A stretch of 64,000 nt of DNA from NCBI GenBank assembly GCA_009103225.1, contig RHPI01001037.1, positions 659,815 to 723,814 on the forward strand. The letters run 5' to 3'. Source of the stretch: Chlorokybus atmophyticus (lineage: Eukaryota > Plantae > Mesostigma and Chlorokybus algae). Made by a program: the position numbers and the translations under genes. The notes under the pieces are model-generated. The model saw only the letters and a list, made by a program, of their open reading frames with translations. It ran no database searches and was not told where the DNA came from. Below are positions 4,609-19,575 of the stretch, piece by piece. How positions within the stretch are numbered: the first letter of the stretch is position 1; each line of letters starts with the position of its first letter.

Positions 4609-6399
4609 TTGGTGCATTTGTGTGCACAGGGAAGGTTGCCACCAGTTTGCACATGGGTAAATGTCAGTTTCGCAGGGTTGTTGTCATGCACACGCAGCAA
4701 CACGTTAGTTCATGCAGTCAAGCTGAGTGGAATTGTCTTGATGAACGGTGGGTCAGTGTGTAAAGATCTAAGACACTACTCGACACATGGCAGTGTGGTT
4801 GTGTTGCGATGGTTTGACATTCAACCTTTTTGCCCATGTATTATGAGAGTCTCTTGGAATAGTTTGTAGTCAAATCACAGACATCCTGCCGATGGTGACG
4901 TTAGGACTTGCAACATTTTTCATAGCATTAGTAAGTGCGCCTTAACTTGCTTGCAACAATTTTAATGGATGTACGTTGGTTTGCATAGGTGTTATTGCGG
5001 TTATGTCTACGGTAGACAAACCTTTGCCCATACGCACTCGTATGATCTGTCGATAAAGACTTTCTCGCCACACTTCAATGTGGACAAAACATAGCAAAAC
5101 AAACTAGGTACCATGATGATAAGCGTCTTCATTGACCCACGGTCTGAAGTGGGTCGGTCAATGTGATTGTCTTGCAGTATTCTGCATCAAATTGGCATTT
5201 GCGTATGTAATTGCTGTCACAATCACCACCTTAGTGTATAACAAAAGGAATGCGGAATTCGTGCATGCAAAGTTACACATGCCATGTTCACATGTTAGCC
5301 GACAGCAGCACAGTCGCCACACTCACCAACCACGCAGTCAAACACAAACCACGCTAGTTGGTAACTATTTCATTGTTCCACCTATCGCTCACCCACCTAC
5401 TAACCATCCCCGTTAGTCATGCATGCACAGCCATCAATTGTATCACTATGCATGCTCACTGAGAAAACTGACTGGCAGTCAGTCTGTTTTACTTGCCCAC
5501 ATGGGCGCTGTTAGTCGGTGTTGCAGGCTCAGCAGCAGCAAGACAATTCCCTTCCTCTCCGCTCTGCCCCCNNNNNNNNNNNNNNNNNNNNNNNNNNNNN
5601 NNNNNNNNNNNNNNNNNNNNNNNNNNNNNNNNNNNNNNNNNNNNNNNNNNNNNNNNNNNNNNNNNNNNNNNNNNNNNNNNNNNNNNNNNNNNNNNNNNNN
5701 NNNNNNNNNNNNNNNNNNNNNNNNNNNNNNNNNNNNNNNNNNNNNNNNNNNNNNNNNNNNNNNNNNNNNNNNNNNNNNNNNNNNNNNNNNNNNNNNNNNN
5801 NNNNNNNNNNNNNNNNNNNNNNNNNNNNNNNNNNNNNNNNNNNNNNNNNNNNNNNNNNNNNNNNNNNNNNNNNNNNNNNNNNNNNNNNNNNNNNNNNNNN
5901 NNNNNTTGCAAACTGTTATTCTGTGCCCCCCCACTTCTCCTTCACTCTGCGCTCAACTCTAGCGGTGTAACCCTTGCATTGCGTTTGGTTGCCGCGGACA
6001 AGTTTTGCTACGATGTTGTCAGTGTACCGGCCCCGCGCGGTCTGTCGGCGTTAAACACGACACGCCGACAGTGGTTTTGGTTCGCGCCGGCGCAAATCCG
6101 CGGCACAGCGCAGCACTCGCGCGGTACTGCGCTGTGCCGCGGCGCTGCAGTGACACTGTACTCACTGTGACAACGTAGGCCACGTGTTCTGTAGTCTTGA
6201 CCGCGGCCTCTGCCTTATTCTCTTCGTGCCGTCGGTTAAGGATTTGTAGCCATCAATAATTGTTGATCGACGGCCCTGCGCGCTCAACAGCTTTGGTATA
6301 GCGCCTTTCACGCCTGTCAAGTGAAAATGCGGCCGGTAATTCGTCCTGCGGCAATCGACTGCCATGGTGATGGCGGGCAGGGCCCCTCTGCCCCGCCCC

Positions 6400-9780: not shown

Positions 9781-10351
9781 TTTTCGACTGAATGTTGTAA
9801 TTATTATTATAATACATAGTATACAGACCTTAAAGCATGCTGCATGCGTAACGTCAAGTGCCGCCGCAAGCTCATTTGTATGCTTGTCCGTTGCGCGCGA
9901 TGATGTATAACACATCTCTGTGTATGCTGTGGCCACTGAATAAACATAGCACCGCGCCGCGACTGTCTGACTGAGTGTTGCATTGCCATCTTGGTGACTT
10001 CGCCACGCCAAGTCTTCGTCCTTGGAACCACACATGTGACGAGAGCCTCCTCATCCCAAAGGTCAACCCGCACACAACATCCTCTTGCGCCAGCAGGTTG
10101 CCACCTTACGCTGCAGACTGGTGTTTTTCCCTTCCGTGCCTTCATTGCGCAAAGTAACAAATAAAAGAGTAATGTTGACCTGGGAACCGTTTTTATATCG
10201 CTTTCAAAAAGGGTTGTAGACAGCTGAAGCTTGTATATACCCTTGTAACTACCCAAGTGGCTCTTAACATACGTGGTGTGTTAGTTTGTTGCATTGACGA
10301 GCAAGGTTGTTGTGTTTGCTTCATCCTGTGTGTGTGTTTGATGTTTCAGCC

Positions 10352-11776
10352 ATGGGGAAGCAAATCATGTGTCAGCGCATTGGCTGCGATGCCCTGTTCG
10401 ACCCGACAGGCGAGAACCCCACAGACGCATGCCAATATCATCCTGGGGTTAGCGAGCTATTCATGTTGTTTATGCTTGAATCAAGCGCCAGCACTTGCAC
10501 AGTCACTCACCGCGCGTTACATGTGTGCATTTGCGCGTGTTGGCGATGCTGTACGACAGCCGGTAAGCAGATGGCTGTCTGGAGGTTGTTTGAGTCGGGG
10601 ATGCCTGTCTTACCTATGCTCTTCCTGCATACGCACAGCCTCTGTTTCACGATGGTAACAAGGAGTGGAGCTGCTGCAAGCAAAAAAGCTATGACTTCAG
10701 TCTGTTCATGCAGTTGCCGGGGTAAGACATGGCAGATTGATGGTTGCTGCACACACACATAGCCGCGTGCAAGCATTGATATGGCTTCATACGCATGCGA
10801 TTGTACGCACGCAAATGTCAAGTTGTAAGCTCTTTATCGTTCTTGATGGCATACATGCACTAGTTAGGTGTTCAGTCCAGCAGTGTTGCAAACTGTTATT
10901 CTGTGTTTCTGCCTTGTGCATATGTGCCGCCTACACGATGAAGGCTGCTCAAAAGTGATGTGTTGTTCAACTTCCAGTTGTCAGAAGGGTCCGCACTCGG
11001 CAGAGAAGCCACCGAAGCCGGAGCCGAAGCCCGTTTCCATGGACAGCAAACTGGCGGCTGTGCGGTTGAACGACAGCAGCAGCAAGCCTGCTCAATTGCC
11101 AGCTAGCAAGCCTTCTTCCTCGAGTTTGGACAAGAGCCAATGCCAGCGCTGCCGGCAAGGCTTCTACTGCTCAGAACACGCCGCTGTACCAGGTACATCG
11201 TCATGTGCGACAGTTGAAAGCTGTTCAGTAGCGTTGAGATCAGTGATGTGAACATGGTAGTTATACATAAGAGTGTGTGTGTGTGTCATAGGGGTAACAT
11301 CTGCAGGTACAGAAGCATCCACGACTGGCGTGTCCCTGAGGGTATCAACTACACCTTTGCCGTCATTATTCAGTAGCCACAATGATTTTTGTGAAGGCAG
11401 TGCTGGTTTAGTTGAGCCTAAAGCGAAGAAAGAAGGACAGCCCGTTGTTGCCACTAATCAAGGTGGTCATAGTGCCTCATCAGAGGTGGACTTGGATGCG
11501 CAGCGGGTGTGCCGAAATAAAGGCTGCGGTGCAAGCTTTACCGAGCGTGAGAACAGCGACACCACTTGCAAGTATCACCCGGGGCCCGCAGTGTTTCACG
11601 ACCGCAAGAAAGGGGTAAGTGAATGGGGTTGGAGTGCAAGGAGGTGTTGTGATCTGCTGAGGCTATTAATTCTTGATTTCGTGCTGCAGTGGGCGTGCTG
11701 CAATGTGCATGTTAACGACTTTGACGAGTTCATGACCATCGCACCGTGCACAGTCGGCCGCCACAGCGCTGGCTAG
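10352..11776 (+). CDS. RAR1: RAR1-type CHORD-I / CCCH / CHORD-II zinc-binding HSP90 co-chaperone
   Basis: CHORD-I: CQRIGCDALF..ACQYHPG|PLFHDGNKEWSCCKQKSYDFSLFMQLPG|CQKGPHSAEKP. Plant-type linker motif CQRCRQGFYCSEH. CHORD-II: CRNKGCGASFTERENSDTTCKYHPGPAVFHDRKKG|WACCNVHVNDFDEFMTIAPCTVGRH. No CS domain follows. Introns 10448-10638, 10722-10977, ~11193-11306 and 11615-11689 are in phase. Confidence 0.93.
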
Positions 11777-12644
11777 GCCTGCAGGAAGGACAACTTGTAC
11801 TGGTTAAGGCTGGTGCGGTTGCAACCATCATCCACATGTGGCACTACGCATGTAGAATATTGGTTTTACTGTGCAATGGTGGTGTTCTGCCGAATTGAGT
11901 AGTACAATAACAACCGTAATGTTGCCCCCCNNNNNNNNNNNNNNNNNNNNNNNNNNNNNNNNNNNNNNNNNNNNNNNNNNNNNNNNNNNNNNNNNNNNNN
12001 NNNNNNNNNNNNNNNNNNNNNNNNNNNNNNNNNNNNNNNNNNNNNNNNNNNNNNNNNNNNNNNNNNNNNNNNNNNNNNNNNNNNNNNNNNNNNNNNNNNN
12101 NNNNNNNNNNNNNNNNNNNNNNNNNNNNNNNNNNNNNNNNNNNNNNNNNNNNNNNNNNNNNNNNNNNNNNNNNNNNNNNNNNNNNNNNNNNNNNNNNNNN
12201 NNNNNNNNNNNNNNNNNNNNNNNNNNNNNNNNNNNNNNNNNNNNNNNNNNNNNNNNNNNNNNNNNNNNNNNNNNNNNNNNNNNNNNNNNNNNNNNNNNNN
12301 NNNNNNNNNNNNNNNNNNNNNNNNNNNNNNNNNNNNNNNNNNNNNNNNNNNNNNNNNNNNNNNNNNNNNNNNNNNNNNNNNNNNNNNNNNNNNNNNNNNN
12401 NNNNNNNNNNNNNNNNNNNNNNNNNNNNNNNNNNNNNNNNNNNNNNNNNNNNNNNNNNNNNNNNNNNNNNNNNNNNNNNNNNNNNNNNNNNNNNNNNNNN
12501 NNNNNNNNNNNNNNNNNNNNNNNNNNNNNNNNNNNNNNNNNNNNNNNNNNNNNNNNNNNNNNNNNNNNNNNNNNNNNNNNNNNNNNNNNNNNNNNNNNNN
12601 NNNNNNNNNNNNNNNNNNNNNNNNNNNNNNNNNNNNNNNNNNNN

Positions 12645-12680
<36 letters not shown>

Positions 12681-12687
<7 letters not shown>

Positions 12688-12936
12688 CCGTATCGGTATT
12701 GGAATACTATCATACTGGTTTTGGTAAACAGTGCTGATACAAAGCAACCATTCTTCACGCGGTTCGGCAAGGTACACGCATCCTATCCCCAACAGCAGGC
12801 TCCACAACCTGAGGTCCGTATCGGTATTGGAATACTACCATGCTGGTTTTGGTAAACAGTGCTGATACAAAGCAACCATCCTTCACGCGGTTCGGCAAGG
12901 TACACGCATCCTATCCCCAACAGCAGGCTCCACAAC
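12681..12936. repeat. Two tandem near-identical 128-bp units next to (CT)n and a gap
   Basis: Units are 12681-12808 and 12809-12936 with a few substitutions. The (CT)n tract runs 12645-12682. Confidence 0.9.
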
Positions 12937-13320
12937 CTGTTGGTATAGTTGGTGCGGTTTTCTTAATGAAGATTGTGGTCAGATTGACATCAGACTACCT
13001 GTAACACAATCTACAAGGCTGTTCGCAAAATGACCCGAGTCAGAGGCCAGCGATACCTATCAGGTCGAACCATGTGAGAGCATCCAGGCGCACTGCTCTG
13101 CTTTCCTGCGATTGCTCATGACTTGTGCATAAGGACATAACTAAGCACAAGACATTTACTTGACAGCCCTGGATTCGCGCATCTCGATGTCCAGAGGCAA
13201 CACAGCAGCAAGGCAAGAGCATACTGAACGTCGCCGGACATTCATTGCCAACCACTAATGGGGTTTGTGAAATACGCAACAACTTGGTCTGAAGGCAAGT
13301 CTACTGGTCACAGATTTGAA

Positions 13321-16300
13321 TCATGGCGAGGATGATACCGACCGCAAACTAAGCTGAGATATGGCGCGCTGCAAGTTGGTGTTTATCGTCAACTGCTTGT
13401 GCGGCATGCGTTCGCCTGTCATCGGAGAAACTTCATTCTGCACAAACCACTGCTCTATTGCAACCTTCTCGTATGAGTAACCATCAGCGGCGACCACGGG
13501 GTCCTGCAAGTACCCGTCACAGTGAGTGCCACATCAGGTGTCAAAGCAACCCAATATGCACACATGGGACAACTAGCCATGACAAGGAAACGAACCCTGT
13601 TTGCATCAGCAACTTACTGTCATGATTTGAGAAGTGATTGGACAGAAGAAACAGTCAATGTCGGGCGACTGGTCCACGTCAGGCCTGGCTCTTGAGCGGC
13701 ATGCCACGCCTTCACGATTGAGGCGCTCTAGCGTGGGAAGCACCTGCAATGCCGAGTTAAGTCCGCCGATTGCAATCCTGCCATACTGCATGCATGTCGC
13801 GCAAACAAACAGTACCTCTTGCGCCAGGTCAGGGCGACAGTGGCGATCTAATGATGCGCATTTAATAGCCAGGTCGGCCAGCTCTTCGGCAATACGTTCC
13901 GGCCAGGGCTCAGGCTTTGAATCCGCAATCTTGTAGAGCTGCCCTTCTCTTAGCGCATCAGATACGAGCCCATACAGGTTTAGCGGCGGCTTTCCAGTAA
14001 GCATCTCCAGCAACACTGCCAGGGAGTGGATTGCACGGAATTGAGCACAACCTGCAACAGTACCAGCAGATGACACACACCAGCAAGGCTTACCAATCCC
14101 AAAACTATATACATCCGACTTGGGCCCAAGCTGGCCAGAGCGGTAGTACTCAGGATCCACATAGAGGAGGGTCCCACCAGGGGATGAATCCATCAACACG
14201 GACATCTTCATGGTTCGTGCTCCGAAGGCAAGTTCGGGTGCGAGGCGGGCAAGCCCAAAATCGCCCACTTTTGCGTTGAAATTCGTATCCAAAAGAACGT
14301 TGGCAGTCTTGAAGTCCCTGCAGAACAGACGTGTCAATTGAACCTCGTGCATAAAAACACACTTGCCGGTAGTGTGAAGGCCAGTGCTTGGCCAGCAGCC
14401 TGCTGATATGAGGCAGGCAGTGCTTTAATCGCGGGAGTCATACCTGTGAATAATTGGTGTGGGAAGTGAATGCAAAAACAACAGACCACGCGCCGCTTGA
14501 ACGGCAATGGCCAAGCGCTTGTCCCAAGGCAAAGGAGGCGTATTTCCACGGCAAAGCAAGCGATCTTCTAGGCTGCCCTGCTCGCAGAACTCGTACACCA
14601 GGGACTGTTGTCCTGGAACTGAGTGATGTCCCATCAGGGCAACAATGTGTGGATGCCTCACGTACCCCAGCACCTGTTCGCAACAACCATGACAACCAGC
14701 ACTTGCATGCTGCAAGTTGATGCGCAACAGTCATCATCATGACCAATGACTGGTACAGTTTGCAGACCAGCAAGTAACGCGGGTGCACTTACTGGATTCC
14801 AGTATGAAGTTGACAAATTCTCGTGCACAGTGCAAAACTGGTACCAAATGACAGAGATATGCATTTGCTTGTGGACACGATGGCCAAAGCAAACTTGAAC
14901 TGCACCTGTAGCTCCTTATCAAACTCAGTCGTTCCCTGCTGCCCGTGTTGGTTGAGACGTTTGATAGCCACAGGGGTGCCTGCTACAGTGCCAAAGTATA
15001 CAGGACCAAACGCTCCTTCACCGATCTTATTTTTTGCGTTGAAATTGCCAGTGGCTATCTTAAGCTCCTCCCACTCAAACTGCGAAGCATCCAGTACTTT
15101 AAGCCGCAATGACAGCAACGAACCAACATGACCACTTGAACACTGTGTATGGAACCAACCTGCCGCAGCTTAGCTTGTGACATTTGTAAGTTTTTCAAGA
15201 AGTCATTCAACTGGGCCTGCATGTCGGTGACTTTTCTGTCAATCGCATCCACTTTGGGGGCCATCTTCCGAATGTCCCCTAGAAGTTGCATCAACTCCGA
15301 GTCCCTTTCACCACCATTCTTGGCAACGATCATTGGCAACTCCTCATGATCCTTTACAGCGCCTTGTTGCAGTTCACGCACCCAATACTGCACGTCACAT
15401 GCATGCATTGGTTACAGAGACAATATGTATACACACCTGAGTCCACAACAGCAGTGACAAGCTCACCTTCTCAGCATTGTCTGGCTTCTGCATCTTCACA
15501 TATACTCGCAAAAGAATGTCTGTGCGCAATGCTGTCAATGCATCTCGCATATTTTCAGCCACCAGTATAAACTTCCGTTCATACACATCCCCTCGCAGAA
15601 AGCGCTTGAGTTCAAACAGCAATTCGCCTTCTTTGCGAGTCCACTTCTCCACCATCTCCTTGGCTGTTGCAAGCGTATCCTGCAATGCAATGCAAAGATG
15701 AGGGTAGCTGCCAACAATCTGGCAACGCGACAACAGGGGACAGAGTTGCACACCTGGACGTACTGCAACCGGCTCACTGTAGTATGGACATCTGCCTCGT
15801 TGCCCAGCTGTATGTGCCTTGCGGACGACTGATCTGTCAACAATGGTTCCACAAGGCTCCTTATCTCTCTGGCTTGCCGCGCTAAACTTGCACACCGCGC
15901 CTGCAACACAGCACCATTGCTGCCGCTTCTGGTACTAACAAGCTGGACATGCTAACTCCAGCAAAAACAACATTTTTTGCATGCAATCTTACAAGAATAG
16001 ACTGATGCAACTAATAGACAGCCAAAGTGTGCACTCTGTATCCGACCTTATTGGCGTTGCAAATGTCGTTCAACCTGTCCAGTTCCGCTGCCAAGAACAC
16101 TATGCCGCGAATGCATCCAGCAAAAGGCATGACAGCTGTCGCTACTTGTACACCAGCTTCAAGCAAGCCTGCAGCCACGACACCAGCGGCGAGAATTCCA
16201 CCACCGACAACGGCAGCACCACCCGCTGCAGCAACAGCCCTAGCAACGGCATGACCTGTAGATGCGGCAGAGAGTCAGCAGCAGCGCCCTGAGCCCGAGC

Positions 16301-18119
16301 CATTAAGCTGTTAGGCACGGTGGCATGGACTCACAGGCACACAAATTGCAAGCAAGCCACAACCACCACAGTCACAATTACACTGTGACGTAATTGTGAG
16401 CAGTTACAGTGTAATTGCTCACAATTACAGTGACACCTTGTTAACCTCAAGGAGGCTTACGGTGTGATGCCGGGTTCAACACGTTGCGCATGGATTCATT
16501 CTCAGCCTTTTCGCTGGCAGTTTTGCCATCAATATTTCTGAGAGTGGGGTCTCCACCACCTTCGAGCAGCACCTTCGCTATCTCCCCTTTTGATAGCACA
16601 GCGGCTTCATGTAAAGGGGTGTCCCCTCTCTAAGACAGCATCATGTTGGCATTTGCAACACTTTGTGAGGTGTGCACATGCAAATGAGGACAACCAAGCC
16701 AGTAGCCATACCGCATTACAAGCGTTGGGGTTCGCCCTGTGGTTGAGCAATTCCAGGACAGCAGATGTCTCCTCGTGTCCAGCAGCCCAGTGAAGCGGTG
16801 TAGAGTTTTGCTGAGCGCAGCATTCATGTCAAATACAGGTGAGCACAAGGTAGGATCAGCCAGATATATCTAAACAACTTCTCAAATGCGTGCCTGTCAG
16901 ACATCGCACAATGTGAAAGTTGCCGCTTGAACAATATTGCATTCTCATAACCATAAGTGCATGACGGCATAGCATGACAGCCATCTGGTGTATGAACGAC
17001 AGCAGGCCAACAACGACTGGTGCAATGCATGACAGTTGTTCAACGATATGTTGCGAGGATGCACTTCTTACTTTGTTGACGGCATTCACGTCTGCACCTC
17101 CGTCACACAAGGCCCTAATGGTTGAACAACTTCCGGACAGGGCAGCGTTATGCAGCGGAGTCGTCCCGTCACGATTTGAGGCCGATGGTTTGGCTCCATG
17201 CTGGATCAGCACCTGCAGAAACCAAGCACACCTACATCAGCACTAGTGGTGACCACAGGCCTAGTTGTCTTCCTGCGAGGCCGCTAACTACGACTAATAA
17301 ACCCTGAATTTCAACACACCACAGCCTGTTCATATCCCTTCCAAAGATGCGCACATCATACAGCACTACATTGTGCCAGTTTGTAGTGATAGATGCAATT
17401 CTTTGTGAGATTGTGACGAGTCCAACCACTGACGACACTCTGTATGTTGCTGACATCGAAAATATACAAGGACACACTGTCTCAATGCCAGAAGACTTGC
17501 AAGATCACGACTGACAATTACGCAATGGTTGTGCAACAAACCACTGACCTTGACCATCTCCGCCTTGCCAAGCAAAGCCGCTTCGTGCAAAGGCGTGCTG
17601 CCCTCGTTGTTCTGTGCATTCACGTCCGCACCCCTGGCGATGAGCACCTCTGCCTCACGGGGCTGTCCATTCTTGACAACCCTGTGCAGAAGGGTGTTGC
17701 CGTCCTGTCCAACAAAACGCTGTAAACTTGAGAGCATCCACATCCGCGCTGCTGTACATACAAGCACAGCTGCGGTCAAGATGACGCAACACTGGACTCA
17801 GGATGTCTCTCGCCACCTGTACAGAACTACTCACCGTGCGAGATACCTGAGTGCGGGCATTGGGGTCTGCGTCTGCCGGCAGTGCGTGCCGGAAGTTTGG
17901 GGCAGATGCATAGTGGGTGTGTGGTTGTTGAAAATTATTAGGTGACCGCGGCGCCATTGGAGAAAAGGACTCCGTCCGTGCGCCTGTCGACGAGGGCAAT
18001 GACGGGGACGAGTGCAAGGCACTGTAAACTGTCCCACTGGCGCTGCCATTGCCGTAAGGAGGCGGCTGAGGAGGGAGGTGTTCTTTTACCTTCTTGCTCC
18101 TGCCAAACAGCTGCTTCAT
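13321..18119 (-). CDS. Ankyrin repeat / MLKL-HeLo-like helical bundle / RLK-Pelle (IRAK-like) kinase / U-box fusion protein
   Basis: Exons join in phase: 18119-17847, 17704-17549, 17212-17072, 16810-16712, 16629-16461, 16255-16047, 15900-15754, 15679-15467, 15387-15160, then kinase exons from 15079. There are five ANK repeats (TPLH-type). Kinase motifs are [16 protein letters not shown]|DFKTAN, DFG and [10 protein letters not shown]. The U-box reads FFCPITSQI|[25 protein letters not shown]. The ANK, kinase and U-box calls are secure; the four-helix-bundle call is an inference. Confidence 0.88.
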
Positions 18120-19575
18120 TCTGTGAGCGCCCTAGAGCAGGCCTCCCCTTTCTTGTTTAGCTCCAGGAACCACGCCGCCGCCGCCACATCCGCCCTTCCC
18201 ACTCGACCATGATGGCCACTGTTAGGCCTCGACACACAAACCCTAACTAGCTCACTAGCTCCTTGCCAACAGCGCCTCAAGAGCAACGCGTCCGTCAGCT
18301 GTCCTGGGCGTACATACACTGCGCCTCAAGCAAGCCCCGAACACGTACCAAAGCAAACAACAGTGTCACAGCTGCGACGCAGCACAAGTAGGCCTAGCCG
18401 CAGCCTGGTCTTCCACAAGAGAAGCTTGCTCCTGTTGGGTTTAAGGCTTCGTAGAGGAGGTCTTGGGCAACAAGCACCCGCTCACTGAACCACTCCTCAT
18501 CCGCCGCCGCCGCCGCCGGCACAGCAGAGATGGAGTCGGGCGCGCATGCAATGTCGCCTGCTGGCAGGATTGCGCGCCACACAATAATTACGTGACGTAT
18601 TTGCCATGTTGCGTCGTAATGTCCAAGTTTCTTCCAAGTTGGGTCTACACTACAGTAACTGTAGGTTTAGGGACCTGGCCTAGTAGGGGCCCTAGGCAGA
18701 GCTGTAGCGTTACTCTGGTACACGGTGCATAATTCTTAGCTGGGATGGAGGCTGAGTCGGTCTGTGTGCGGCGGTGAATTGGTAAATTTGTGTATCTGAG
18801 TAGGGTAAGGTGCCCTTACTTCGGACACTTTTTACTAATAAGGTCGAACCTGATGTAATTTTAAGCCGTTTTGAGCTCTTAATAACTCATCTGAAAGCTC
18901 ATTTGATGGCCTATCGGCTGGCCTCGTCCTCGGATTTTTCTCCAATGGCATGCTCTCATGAGCAGCAGGGTAAGACCACCAAAACTTGCAGCCGATCTAA
19001 TGTGGCTGATCCTAACTTTGGACCAGCTTGAATCGCATGTAGGTTGTAAGGCCGACGGTGGTTGTGGCGGCGCAACGGCGATAAAGTGCCAGGCAGTGCC
19101 GCTAGGTTGGTGGCGCACTGGTGGCGTGGCTTACGCCAAAGAGCGGCAGGTACAACGAGCCTGCAGGTGAGCTCAAGTGTTGGTTGGACTGCATTGTGTG
19201 TATGGCCTCCTTGTAAGCTCAAGCGTTGGTTGGACTATCTAAGTGTATGCACGTCTTGTGAGCTCAAGTAGTGGTTGGACTGCCTACATGTATGCACGCC
19301 TTGTGTGTTTGCATCTTTGTGTGTTTGTTGGTTGATAACCACACACGTTTGCACAGCATGTACACACAGCAAGCACACCGATTCACACATGATGTACAGC
19401 GAATGGTGTATGCAGAGTTGCATGTATCAGTTGTGAGGCGTAAGCAGGTTTATATGTACAAGTGAACAAGCGCTATTTACATGTGGTCCAAGCTGTGCTA
19501 AGGCTAAGACTAGTAAAGGATCTTGGTGAGGCGCAAGCCGCCTCTCTTGCATGCCCATGCACGATTTTTCGCCGG

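What the first reader, a model, noticed from the sequence alone, without database searches (positions are those of the whole stretch)
13321..18119. Ankyrin / MLKL-HeLo-like bundle / active kinase / U-box: a possible one-protein immune or cell-death module in an alga
Seen: the exons splice in phase into one protein. It has a Pro-rich N-terminus, 5 ANK repeats, a helical domain ([29 protein letters not shown]|[29 protein letters not shown]|[41 protein letters not shown]), a coiled-coil-like linker, a kinase with VAIK/HRD/DFG intact, and a U-box. Known: animal and plant MLKLs are four-helix bundle plus brace plus pseudokinase, and plant kinase-U-box PUBs usually carry a USP-like N-terminus rather than ANK. 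Inference: the 'NK-x-C-x-x-LA' helix pattern matches MLKL_NTD/HeLo-like domains. Sensor, putative membrane effector, catalytically competent Pelle kinase and E3 ligase would then be fused in an architecture I do not recognise.
Basis: partly seen in the sequence, partly recalled or inferred. Interest (0 to 1): 0.85.

Follow-up and report, generated by a model that had tools for sequence, protein, structure and literature searches.

The report
Algal ankyrin–MLKL-like–kinase–U-box fusion protein
A transcribed 15-exon gene of the early-branching streptophyte alga Chlorokybus encodes one protein that joins ankyrin repeats, a hydrophobic glycine-zipper stretch, a probable MLKL-type helical "executioner" domain, an intact RLCK kinase and a U-box ubiquitin ligase; the combination appears undescribed, but each pairwise fusion is already known in plants.

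Summary
A minus-strand gene (18119..13321) has 15 exons and 14 GT..AG introns, all in phase. Spliced contigs from two independent studies skip every intron and run from 5'UTR to 3'UTR. The product equals EukProt Chlorokybus atmophyticus Chlat1/4379 (923 aa); an alternative donor gives 927 aa.

Domains found:
- Pro/Ser-rich N-terminus
- 5 ANK repeats
- a 55-aa Gly/Ala-rich hydrophobic stretch, the only one in the protein
- a helical domain matching Pfam MLKL_N (E 3e-6, 27 bits, exactly at the curated cutoff, profile 7-141/142)
- a coiled coil
- a kinase with all catalytic motifs
- a U-box

The MLKL_N call rests on a borderline profile hit, carried mostly by the second half of the domain, plus concordant language-model neighbours (MLKL_N, MCAfunc, RPW8). 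AlphaFold without an alignment failed (pLDDT 49-55), so the four-helix fold is untested.

The kinase+U-box half is an ordinary member of the conserved plant PUB-VI/RLCK-IXb family (43-47% identity), with the usual USP module replaced. MLKL_NTD plus an active-looking kinase (wheat Pm13) and bundle plus U-box (MCAfunc-PUBs) are already known. No relative of the helical domain was found in three large searches.

Verdict: a new variant of known kinds. First readers also flagged MLKL-like bundles in other architectures elsewhere in this genome; those notes are unchecked.

The parts
13321..18119 (-). Whole coding region, ATG to stop: 15 exons, 923 aa (927 aa with the alternative donor)
   Evidence: Model built equals P0001 exactly. 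Spliced contigs X1 and X2 cover it end to end with 0 mismatches.
17847..18119 (-). Exon 1: Pro/Ser-rich, probably disordered N-terminus (aa 1-91) with a PPPY motif at aa 19-22. An alternative donor at 17835 adds 4 aa.
   Evidence: Composition 15% P, 14% S and PPxY at 19. X2 ends the exon at 17847 and X1 at 17835 (table 8). No Pfam domain.
16461..17704 (-). Exons 2-5 (17704-17549, 17212-17072, 16810-16712, 16629-16461): five ankyrin repeats, aa 92-270
   Evidence: Pfam Ank 5 stretches E 1.7e-32 and Ank_2 E 9.4e-46. Each exon hits Ank on its own.
16047..16255 (-). Exon 6 (aa 280-349): Gly/Ala-rich hydrophobic stretch (about aa 283-338) with overlapping small-xxx-small motifs, running into the first helix of the helical domain
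   Evidence: This is the only region of the protein with 19-residue Kyte-Doolittle mean above 1.6. Peaks are 2.18 at aa 302 and 1.84 at aa 326, and there are seven overlapping [GAS]xxx[GAS]xxx[GAS] motifs.
15467..15900 (-). Exons 7-8 (15900-15754, 15679-15467; aa 350-469): core of the MLKL_N-like helical domain. The Pfam match spans aa 334-483 in all.
   Evidence: PF22215 MLKL_N E 2.9e-6, 27.3 bits, profile 7-141/142. Exon 8 alone gives E 0.0045 on profile 64-109. aa 372-490 alone give E 1.5e-5 on profile 45-141. Against the X4 variant, aa 335-483 show 12 synonymous and 1 non-synonymous change.
15160..15387 (-). Exon 9 (aa 470-545): end of the MLKL_N match, then a coiled-coil helix (about aa 486-545). 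It sits where the brace lies in MLKL and the long alpha-helical domain lies in PUB-VI.
   Evidence: 14 of 18 a/d heptad positions are hydrophobic. A long helix is predicted at aa 486-549. Only coiled-coil-type Pfam hits appear: NPV_P10 and CLZ.
13816..15079 (-). Exons 10-13 (15079-14906, 14673-14444, 14317-14094, 14015-13816; aa 546-821): RLK/Pelle (RLCK-IXb-like) Ser/Thr kinase with intact catalytic motifs
   Evidence: Pkinase E 2.4e-41. GEGAFG 565, VAIK 582, HRD 679, DFG 699. Best solved relatives are PBL2, BIK1, RIPK, FERONIA and IRAK4. 43-47% identity to PUB32-35/50-52.
13321..13743 (-). Exons 14-15 (13743-13618, 13503-13321; aa 822-923): linker and C-terminal U-box E3 ligase domain
   Evidence: U-box PF04564 E 6.2e-14, aa 851-912. 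It aligns with the U-boxes of PUB-VI proteins across the full length.

Best explanation
The gene encodes a Chlorokybus-specific member of the streptophyte PUB-VI/RLCK-IXb family, which has a dual kinase plus U-box E3 ligase backbone. The usual N-terminal USP module is replaced by five ankyrin repeats, a hydrophobic glycine-zipper stretch and a divergent helical domain of the MLKL_N / HeLo-like / RPW8 / MCAfunc superfamily.

Shown:
- It is a single transcript.
- The domain order is as described.
- The catalytic motifs are intact.
- The C-terminal half belongs to the PUB-VI/RLCK-IXb family.
- The helical domain is under purifying selection.

Inferred mechanism:
- The coiled coil dimerises the protein, as in PUB33.
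- The kinase, coupled to the bundle through this brace-like helix, controls exposure of the bundle by (auto)phosphorylation.
- The hydrophobic Gly-zipper and bundle associate with or insert into a membrane, giving either membrane-localised signalling or ion leak and cell death.
- The ANK repeats bind a partner or trigger.
- The U-box ubiquitinates substrates or the protein itself and so limits the response.
For: - Gene model and transcript.
- Identity with the annotated Chlorokybus protein.
- MLKL_N profile match at the curated threshold over nearly the whole profile. It is also seen independently with exon 8 alone and with aa 372-490.
- Five helical linkers of PUB-VI relatives and the protein's own coiled coil give no MLKL_N hit even at E<=10.
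- Language-model neighbours are MLKL_N, MCAfunc and RPW8 clusters, scoring 0.89-0.94 for aa 320-480.
- The hydrophobic Gly/Ala stretch lies directly N-terminal of the bundle. A glycine zipper conserved in MLKL, HELLP and RPW8 is reported as needed for HELLP membrane targeting (bioRxiv 10.1101/839308, citing Daskalov 2016).
- Kinase+U-box is 43-47% identical over 96-99% of its length to PUB32-35/50-52 and to algal Usp-kinase-U-box proteins.
- PUB33 has both kinase and E3 activities and a dimerising alpha-helical domain: bioRxiv 10.64898/2026.02.10.704836.
- Against the X4 variant there are 31 synonymous and 9 non-synonymous differences overall, and 12 to 1 in the bundle.
Against: - The MLKL_N score sits exactly at the cutoff (27.0-27.3 vs 27). 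It falls to 23.5 bits in the full-length scan, and the first half of the domain contributes almost nothing.
- No confident 3D model was obtained, so there is no structural match.
- No sequence relatives of the domain were found, so conservation beyond Chlorokybus is unknown.
- The bundle is internal, behind about 280 residues. In MLKL, HeLo, RPW8 and CC-NLR proteins it is N-terminal with a free first helix.
- There are no functional data of any kind for membrane binding, cell death, kinase activity or ligase activity.
Confidence: 0.6

Rival explanations
1. [quoted passage not shown] On this reading the MLKL_N hit is a composition-driven near-threshold false positive, and the protein is simply an ANK-substituted PUB-VI kinase-ligase.
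For: - The score is borderline and falls to 23.5 bits, below the cutoff of 27, in the whole-protein scan.
- The first half of the domain gives no hit.
- The neighbouring coiled coil reaches E 7.6e-5 on an obviously unrelated helical family, NPV_P10. This shows that helical bias can produce small E-values.
- AlphaFold gives long helices rather than a compact bundle, though at low confidence.
- PUB33 has such a helical domain (bioRxiv 10.64898/2026.02.10.704836).
Against: - The match covers 135 of 142 profile positions in the right order, and it reappears with sub-fragments at consistent profile positions.
- The five PUB-VI helical linkers tested give no MLKL_N hit at E<=10.
- Two language-model searches return MLKL_N, MCAfunc and RPW8 clusters as neighbours.
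- Similarity to PUB-VI proteins starts only at about aa 539, just before the kinase.
Confidence: 0.2
2. The Gly/Ala-rich stretch is a constitutive transmembrane hairpin, made of two hydrophobic segments around aa 287-311 and 317-338. It anchors the protein permanently in a membrane with both ends cytosolic. The bundle would then act as a juxtamembrane regulatory or channel-like module, comparable to the membrane-associated MCAfunc region of MCA Ca2+ channels, rather than as a released cell-death executioner. The protein would be a membrane-resident signalling kinase and ligase.
For: - There are two hydropathy peaks above the usual TM threshold (2.18 and 1.84), separated by a short polar turn. 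Nothing comparable occurs elsewhere in the protein.
- MCAfunc clusters are among the nearest language-model neighbours.
- MCAfunc is the Ca2+-influx domain of the plasma-membrane MCA proteins and is ancestrally fused to the U-box in charophytes (PMC8049495, PMC11663713 abstract).
Against: - The segments are very rich in Gly and Ala and contain Arg and Pro in the second one. That is unusual for stable TM helices and more like inducible glycine-zipper insertion motifs.
- Pfam gives MLKL_N, not MCAfunc, at E<=1.
- No TM predictor or experiment was available.
Confidence: 0.2

Closest known systems
PUB-VI / RLCK-IXb proteins of land plants and streptophyte algae (Arabidopsis PUB32-35, PUB50-53; USP + alpha-helical domain + RLCK + U-box)
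   Same: The kinase and U-box are colinear and 43-47% identical over 96-99% of aa 540-923. A helical or coiled-coil segment lies directly before the kinase. It is an RD kinase with intact motifs. PUB33 is experimentally both a kinase and an E3 (bioRxiv 10.64898/2026.02.10.704836).
   Different: There is no USP domain. In its place are a Pro/Ser-rich tail, 5 ANK repeats, a hydrophobic Gly-zipper stretch and an MLKL_N-like domain. The helical parts show no detectable sequence similarity.
MLKL_NTD-kinase fusion proteins of grasses, e.g. wheat/Aegilops Pm13 (PMC10951266, PMC11297308)
   Same: The order is MLKL_N-type bundle, helical brace, then an RLK/Pelle-type kinase that keeps all catalytic residues, unlike the pseudokinase of true MLKLs.
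   Different: In Pm13 the bundle is N-terminal, there are no ANK repeats and no U-box, and the kinase is reported as LRR-VIII/DLSV-type rather than RLCK-IXb. There is no hydrophobic Gly/Ala stretch here-equivalent that I could check.
Animal MLKL and seed-plant MLKLs (HeLo/4HB + brace + pseudokinase; bioRxiv 10.1101/681015)
   Same: The domain logic is bundle, brace-like helix, then a kinase fold. The bundle matches the same Pfam family, MLKL_N.
   Different: The kinase here is catalytically intact and belongs to a different subfamily. The bundle is internal rather than N-terminal. There are extra ANK and U-box domains. There is no Ser-rich C-terminal region. Plant MLKLs were described for seed plants only.
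MCAfunc/UND-U-box-ARM ligases (PUB13, PUB45 type; ancestral in charophytes, PMC8049495)
   Same: A helical domain of the MLKL_N/MCAfunc/RPW8 neighbourhood sits in the same polypeptide as a U-box, in streptophyte algae.
   Different: In those proteins the bundle directly precedes the U-box, ARM repeats follow, and there is no kinase. Here a complete kinase separates the bundle from the U-box, and the repeats are ANK and N-terminal.
Unnamed ANK-kinase-U-box protein P0025 (JGI transcriptome samples 3300017069 and 3300017219) and, more loosely, plant KEG (RING + kinase + ANK)
   Same: P0025 has ANK repeats, the most similar kinase (47% identity, same HRDFK and LARLAPEL motifs) and a U-box, in the same order. 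KEG shows that E3 + kinase + ANK in one plant protein is known (mentioned in bioRxiv 10.64898/2026.02.10.704836).
   Different: P0025 has only a low-complexity linker where the Chlorokybus protein has the Gly-zipper and bundle, and it gives no MLKL_N hit. KEG has a RING rather than a U-box and a different domain order.

Membership tests
Pfam MLKL_N (PF22215) / HeLo-like four-helix-bundle superfamily | Sequence match to the family profile at or above the curated gathering score | tested here: inconclusive
   The score is 27.0-27.3 bits against a cutoff of 27 when aa 275-550 or 310-475 are scanned alone (E about 3e-6, profile 7-141/142). It is 23.5 bits in the full protein. Most of the score comes from aa 382-483.
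Pfam MLKL_N (PF22215) / HeLo-like four-helix-bundle superfamily | Compact four-helix-bundle fold | tested here: inconclusive
   AlphaFold2 without an alignment gave pLDDT 54.5 and 48.9. Foldseek and VIA searches returned only generic long-helix matches. No homologues could be found to build an alignment.
Pfam MLKL_N (PF22215) / HeLo-like four-helix-bundle superfamily | Bundle at the extreme N-terminus with a free first helix | tested here: not met
   The domain starts at about aa 322-334, after the Pro-rich tail and five ANK repeats.
Pfam MLKL_N (PF22215) / HeLo-like four-helix-bundle superfamily | Hydrophobic or glycine-zipper element needed for membrane targeting (bioRxiv 10.1101/839308, citing Daskalov 2016) | tested here: met
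   A Gly/Ala-rich stretch at aa 283-338 has KD19 up to 2.18 and seven overlapping small-xxx-small-xxx-small motifs, directly at the N-terminal edge of the bundle. Its function is not tested.
Pfam MLKL_N (PF22215) / HeLo-like four-helix-bundle superfamily | Membrane permeabilisation or cell-death activity | not testable with these tools
   Needs expression of the isolated domain.
MLKL proper (animal and seed-plant MLKL) | C-terminal pseudokinase lacking catalytic residues | tested here: not met
   GEGAFG, VAIK (K585), HRD (D681) and DFG are all present. The best relatives are the active RLCKs PBL2, BIK1 and RIPK, and IRAK4.
PUB-VI / RLCK-IXb | RLCK-IXb-type kinase directly followed by a U-box in one polypeptide | tested here: met
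   43-47% identity over 96-99% of aa 540-923 to PUB32-35/50-52 and to algal homologues. Pkinase and U-box Pfam hits.
PUB-VI / RLCK-IXb | N-terminal USP (UspA-like) domain | tested here: not met
   There is no Usp hit at E<=1, and ANK repeats take its place. Algal relatives P0010, P0011, P0015, P0016 and P0069 do carry Usp.
PUB-VI / RLCK-IXb | Long alpha-helical (dimerising) segment N-terminal of the kinase | tested here: met
   A helix is predicted at aa 486-549. The heptad pattern has 14 of 18 a/d positions hydrophobic. Dimerisation itself is not testable here.
PUB-VI / RLCK-IXb | Dual kinase and E3 ligase activity | not testable with these tools
   Only motif integrity could be checked.

The most novel reading that the evidence does not exclude
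This is a self-contained sensor-executioner of regulated cell death or immunity in the earliest-branching streptophyte lineage. The ANK repeats sense a trigger. The active RLCK kinase licenses its own MLKL-like bundle by autophosphorylation, with no separate RIPK3-like partner. The Gly-zipper and bundle permeabilise a membrane, and the in-cis U-box sets the threshold by self-ubiquitination. If so, MLKL-type execution coupled to RLCK/PUB signalling would predate land plants.
Probability: 0.2. Interest if true: 0.8.

Novelty: new variant of a known kind. Interest (0 to 1): 0.55.

Why it matters
Plant MLKLs have been described for seed plants and as pseudokinases, and the PUB-VI/RLCK-IXb kinase-ligases are ancient but poorly understood. 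This protein, from the streptophyte lineage most distant from land plants, puts a probable MLKL-type membrane-acting bundle, an intact kinase and an E3 ligase in cis.

If the bundle is confirmed, it offers a natural single-chain system for asking how phosphorylation and ubiquitination gate a HeLo-like domain. It would also show that such bundles were already being shuffled among signalling architectures in early streptophytes. First readers noted several other MLKL-like fusions in this genome, but those notes are unchecked.

If the bundle is not confirmed, the gene is an ordinary lineage-specific N-terminal swap in a known family.

Tried and rejected
1. Exon-2 acceptor 17719 and exon-1 donor 17835 as the main form. 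Contig arithmetic and the exact match show that 17847->17704 is the annotated and X2 form. 17835 is an alternative donor used by X1, and 17719 is unused.
2. Sequence homologues of the helical domain. I ran phmmer of exon 8 against 1.84 billion representatives, a word-indexed search of aa 275-550 and a search of aa 322-490 alone. Each returned only the protein itself. P0002 is a repeat-driven chance hit.
3. PDB by sequence for aa 275-550 gave nothing meaningful (NUP133 at E 0.07).
4. AlphaFold2 on aa 275-550 and 322-490 without an alignment gave low confidence. Foldseek against PDB and a VIA wide search gave only generic helical matches such as BAR domains and designed bundles. I treat these as uninformative, not as evidence against a bundle.
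5. A metagenome scan with aa 281-545 gave one TARA locus. It shares only the seeded '[10 protein letters not shown]' coiled-coil decamer in a small unrelated ORF, so I rejected it as a seeding artefact.
6. I asked whether the PUB-VI helical linker is a cryptic MLKL_N. Five relatives scanned at E<=10 gave no hit, so I rejected this.
7. P0025 as an orthologue with the same architecture. It has ANK, kinase and U-box but no bundle.
8. I did not type in MLKL, HELLP or RPW8 sequences from memory to make pairwise alignments. The resemblance I recall is a lead only.


Full report
**Observation**

I read the minus strand of 13200-18250 and built an exon model by hand, then checked it by script. It has fifteen exons, every intron is GT..AG, and the frame is continuous from the ATG at 18119 to the stop at 13321-13323.

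A phmmer search with exon 8 against 1.84 billion representative proteins returned a 923-aa protein, P0001, at 100% identity. The listing of cluster members names it EukProt EP00898 Chlorokybus atmophyticus, jgi/Chlat1/4379. With exon-1 donor 17847 and exon-2 acceptor 17704 my spliced translation equals P0001 exactly.

**Transcript evidence**

The look-up of sequencing runs found two runs from different studies (X1 from 2013, X2 from 2021) that hold about half the sampled words, as expected for spliced RNA. Each holds a single contig (3245 and 3170 nt) with no mismatches. Each contig skips all 14 introns at my junctions and runs from beyond 18250 to the 3'UTR.

So no transcript splits the ANK part from the kinase part. 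X1 uses an alternative exon-1 donor at 17835 (+12 nt, +4 aa).

A third run, X4, carries a 95-99% identical contig with the same junctions. It may be a strain, a cryptic species or a paralogue; I cannot tell which. Of its 40 listed differences, 31 are synonymous and 9 are not. Within the MLKL_N-like core (aa 335-483) the count is 12 to 1. This indicates purifying selection on the helical domain.

**Domains (P0001 numbering)**

- aa 1-91: Pro/Ser-rich (15% P, 14% S) with one PPPY motif.
- aa 92-270: five ankyrin repeats (Ank E 1.7e-32, five stretches).
- aa 283-338: the only strongly hydrophobic part of the protein. The 19-residue Kyte-Doolittle mean reaches 2.18 and 1.84 in two peaks. The stretch is very rich in Gly and Ala and has seven overlapping small-xxx-small-xxx-small motifs.
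- aa 334-483: Pfam MLKL_N (PF22215), profile positions 7-141 of 142 (details below).
- aa 486-545: a coiled coil. 14 of 18 a/d positions are hydrophobic, a long helix is predicted, and only coiled-coil-type Pfam hits appear.
- aa 559-819: protein kinase (E 2.4e-41) with GEGAFG, VAIK, HRD and DFG intact. The best solved relatives are PBL2, BIK1, RIPK, FERONIA and IRAK4, which places it in the RLK/Pelle family.
- aa 851-912: U-box (E 6.2e-14).

**How solid is the MLKL-like call?**

For:
- Scanned alone, the domain gives E 2.9e-6 to 3.5e-6 and 27.0-27.3 bits against a curated cutoff of 27.
- Exon 8 alone gives E 0.0045 on profile 64-109. aa 372-490 give E 1.5e-5 on profile 45-141. These positions are consistent with each other and colinear.
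- The helical linkers of five PUB-VI relatives, and the protein's own coiled coil, give no MLKL_N hit at E<=10.
- Two ESM-Atlas feature searches put MLKL_N, MCAfunc and RPW8 clusters (Oomycota, Mucoromycota, Streptophyta) at the top. Scores are 0.89-0.94 for aa 320-480 and 0.75-0.84 for aa 281-545.

Against:
- The score falls to 23.5 bits in the whole-protein scan.
- The adjacent coiled coil reaches E 7.6e-5 on an unrelated helical family, which shows that helical bias can give small E-values.
- No confident structure could be computed. No homologue of the domain exists in three large searches, so both AlphaFold jobs ran without an alignment (pLDDT 54.5 and 48.9). The fold searches returned only generic long-helix proteins.

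I put the odds that this is a true MLKL_N/HeLo-like superfamily domain at about 70%. The four-helix fold remains untested.

**What the backbone is**

aa 540-923 are 43-47% identical over 96-99% of their length to plant PUB32-35/50-52 and to algal Usp-kinase-U-box proteins from Mesotaenium and Closterium (Pfam check). [quoted passage not shown] PUB33 has been shown to be both an active kinase and an active E3, and it dimerises through the helical domain (bioRxiv 10.64898/2026.02.10.704836).

Similarity to these proteins begins only at about aa 539, just before the kinase. The Chlorokybus protein is therefore a PUB-VI/RLCK-IXb member with a replaced N-terminal half.

Its nearest kinase relative, P0025, comes from two JGI transcriptome samples. 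It also has ANK repeats, with more of them upstream in the same transcript, but only a low-complexity linker where the bundle would be. So ANK-kinase-U-box exists elsewhere, and the Gly-zipper plus bundle is the Chlorokybus-specific insert.

**Comparison with the literature**

- Plant MLKLs were reported for seed plants and carry pseudokinases (bioRxiv 10.1101/681015). Here the kinase is intact and of another subfamily, so this is not an MLKL orthologue.
- An MLKL_NTD + brace + kinase with all catalytic residues is known in grasses (Pm13, PMC10951266).
- The related MCAfunc bundle fused to U-box(+ARM) is reported as the ancestral MCAfunc architecture in charophytes (PMC8049495).
- A glycine zipper shared by MLKL, HELLP and RPW8 is reported as required for HELLP membrane targeting (bioRxiv 10.1101/839308, citing Daskalov 2016). 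That fits the hydrophobic stretch at the bundle's N-terminal edge.
- Full-text searches for MLKL with streptophyte algae or Chlorokybus found no description of this protein.

**Mechanism (inference)**

I propose a dimeric, membrane-associating kinase-ligase. The coiled coil acts as a brace between kinase and bundle. Kinase (auto)phosphorylation gates exposure of the Gly-zipper and bundle. The ANK repeats bind a partner, and the U-box ubiquitinates substrates or the protein itself.

Two rivals remain. In the first, the helical part is only a dimerisation linker and the Pfam hit is spurious. In the second, the hydrophobic stretch is a constitutive transmembrane hairpin and the bundle is a juxtamembrane or MCAfunc-like module rather than a released executioner.

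**Earlier notes of this scan**

One note covers the same locus with the same reading. Several first-reader notes report MLKL-like bundles in other architectures elsewhere in this genome: WD40+kinase, U-box+WD40, and one next to an NLR. I could not check them. My searches did not detect them as sequence relatives of this domain.

**Verdict**

This is a new variant (a new domain combination) of known kinds, and it is of moderate interest pending a structural test of the bundle.

Noticed in passing
window 10307-11776 (+ strand): The tail-to-tail neighbour is a multi-exon gene encoding CHORD domains (Pfam CHORD E 7.7e-20 for ORF 11273-11776 and E 1.4e-4 for ORF 10307-10762). That makes it a RAR1/CHP-type Zn-binding co-chaperone candidate. 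In plants RAR1 is an NLR co-chaperone; the adjacency may be chance.
   Followed up: partly
window about 11900-12650 and 5570-5900: Assembly gaps (runs of N). The first is flanked by a (GA)n/(TC)n microsatellite, seen as the ERERER / SLSLSL translations.
   Followed up: no
window 12681-12936: Two tandem copies of a 128-nt unit, 98% identical, just downstream of the gene's 3' end.
   Followed up: no
window 17835-17847 (- strand): There are two in-frame exon-1 donors 12 nt apart. Run X2 and the JGI model use 17847; run X1 uses 17835. This gives 923-aa and 927-aa isoforms.
   Followed up: yes
window 18053-18064 (- strand; aa 19-22): A single PPPY (PPxY) motif lies in the disordered N-terminus. This motif type is bound by the WW domains of NEDD4-family ligases. 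[quoted passage not shown] This is only a motif match.
   Followed up: no
run X4 laid on window 14902-17694: A 95-99% identical spliced contig with the same exon junctions, small differences at the exon 5/6 junction, and 31 synonymous to 9 non-synonymous changes. It may be a second strain, a cryptic species or a paralogue of Chlorokybus expressing the same architecture.
   Followed up: partly
L003 1561-1878: A TARA ocean scaffold has a 105-aa ORF sharing the decamer [10 protein letters not shown] with the coiled coil. It was found only because that peptide seeded the scan, so it is probably meaningless.
   Followed up: partly
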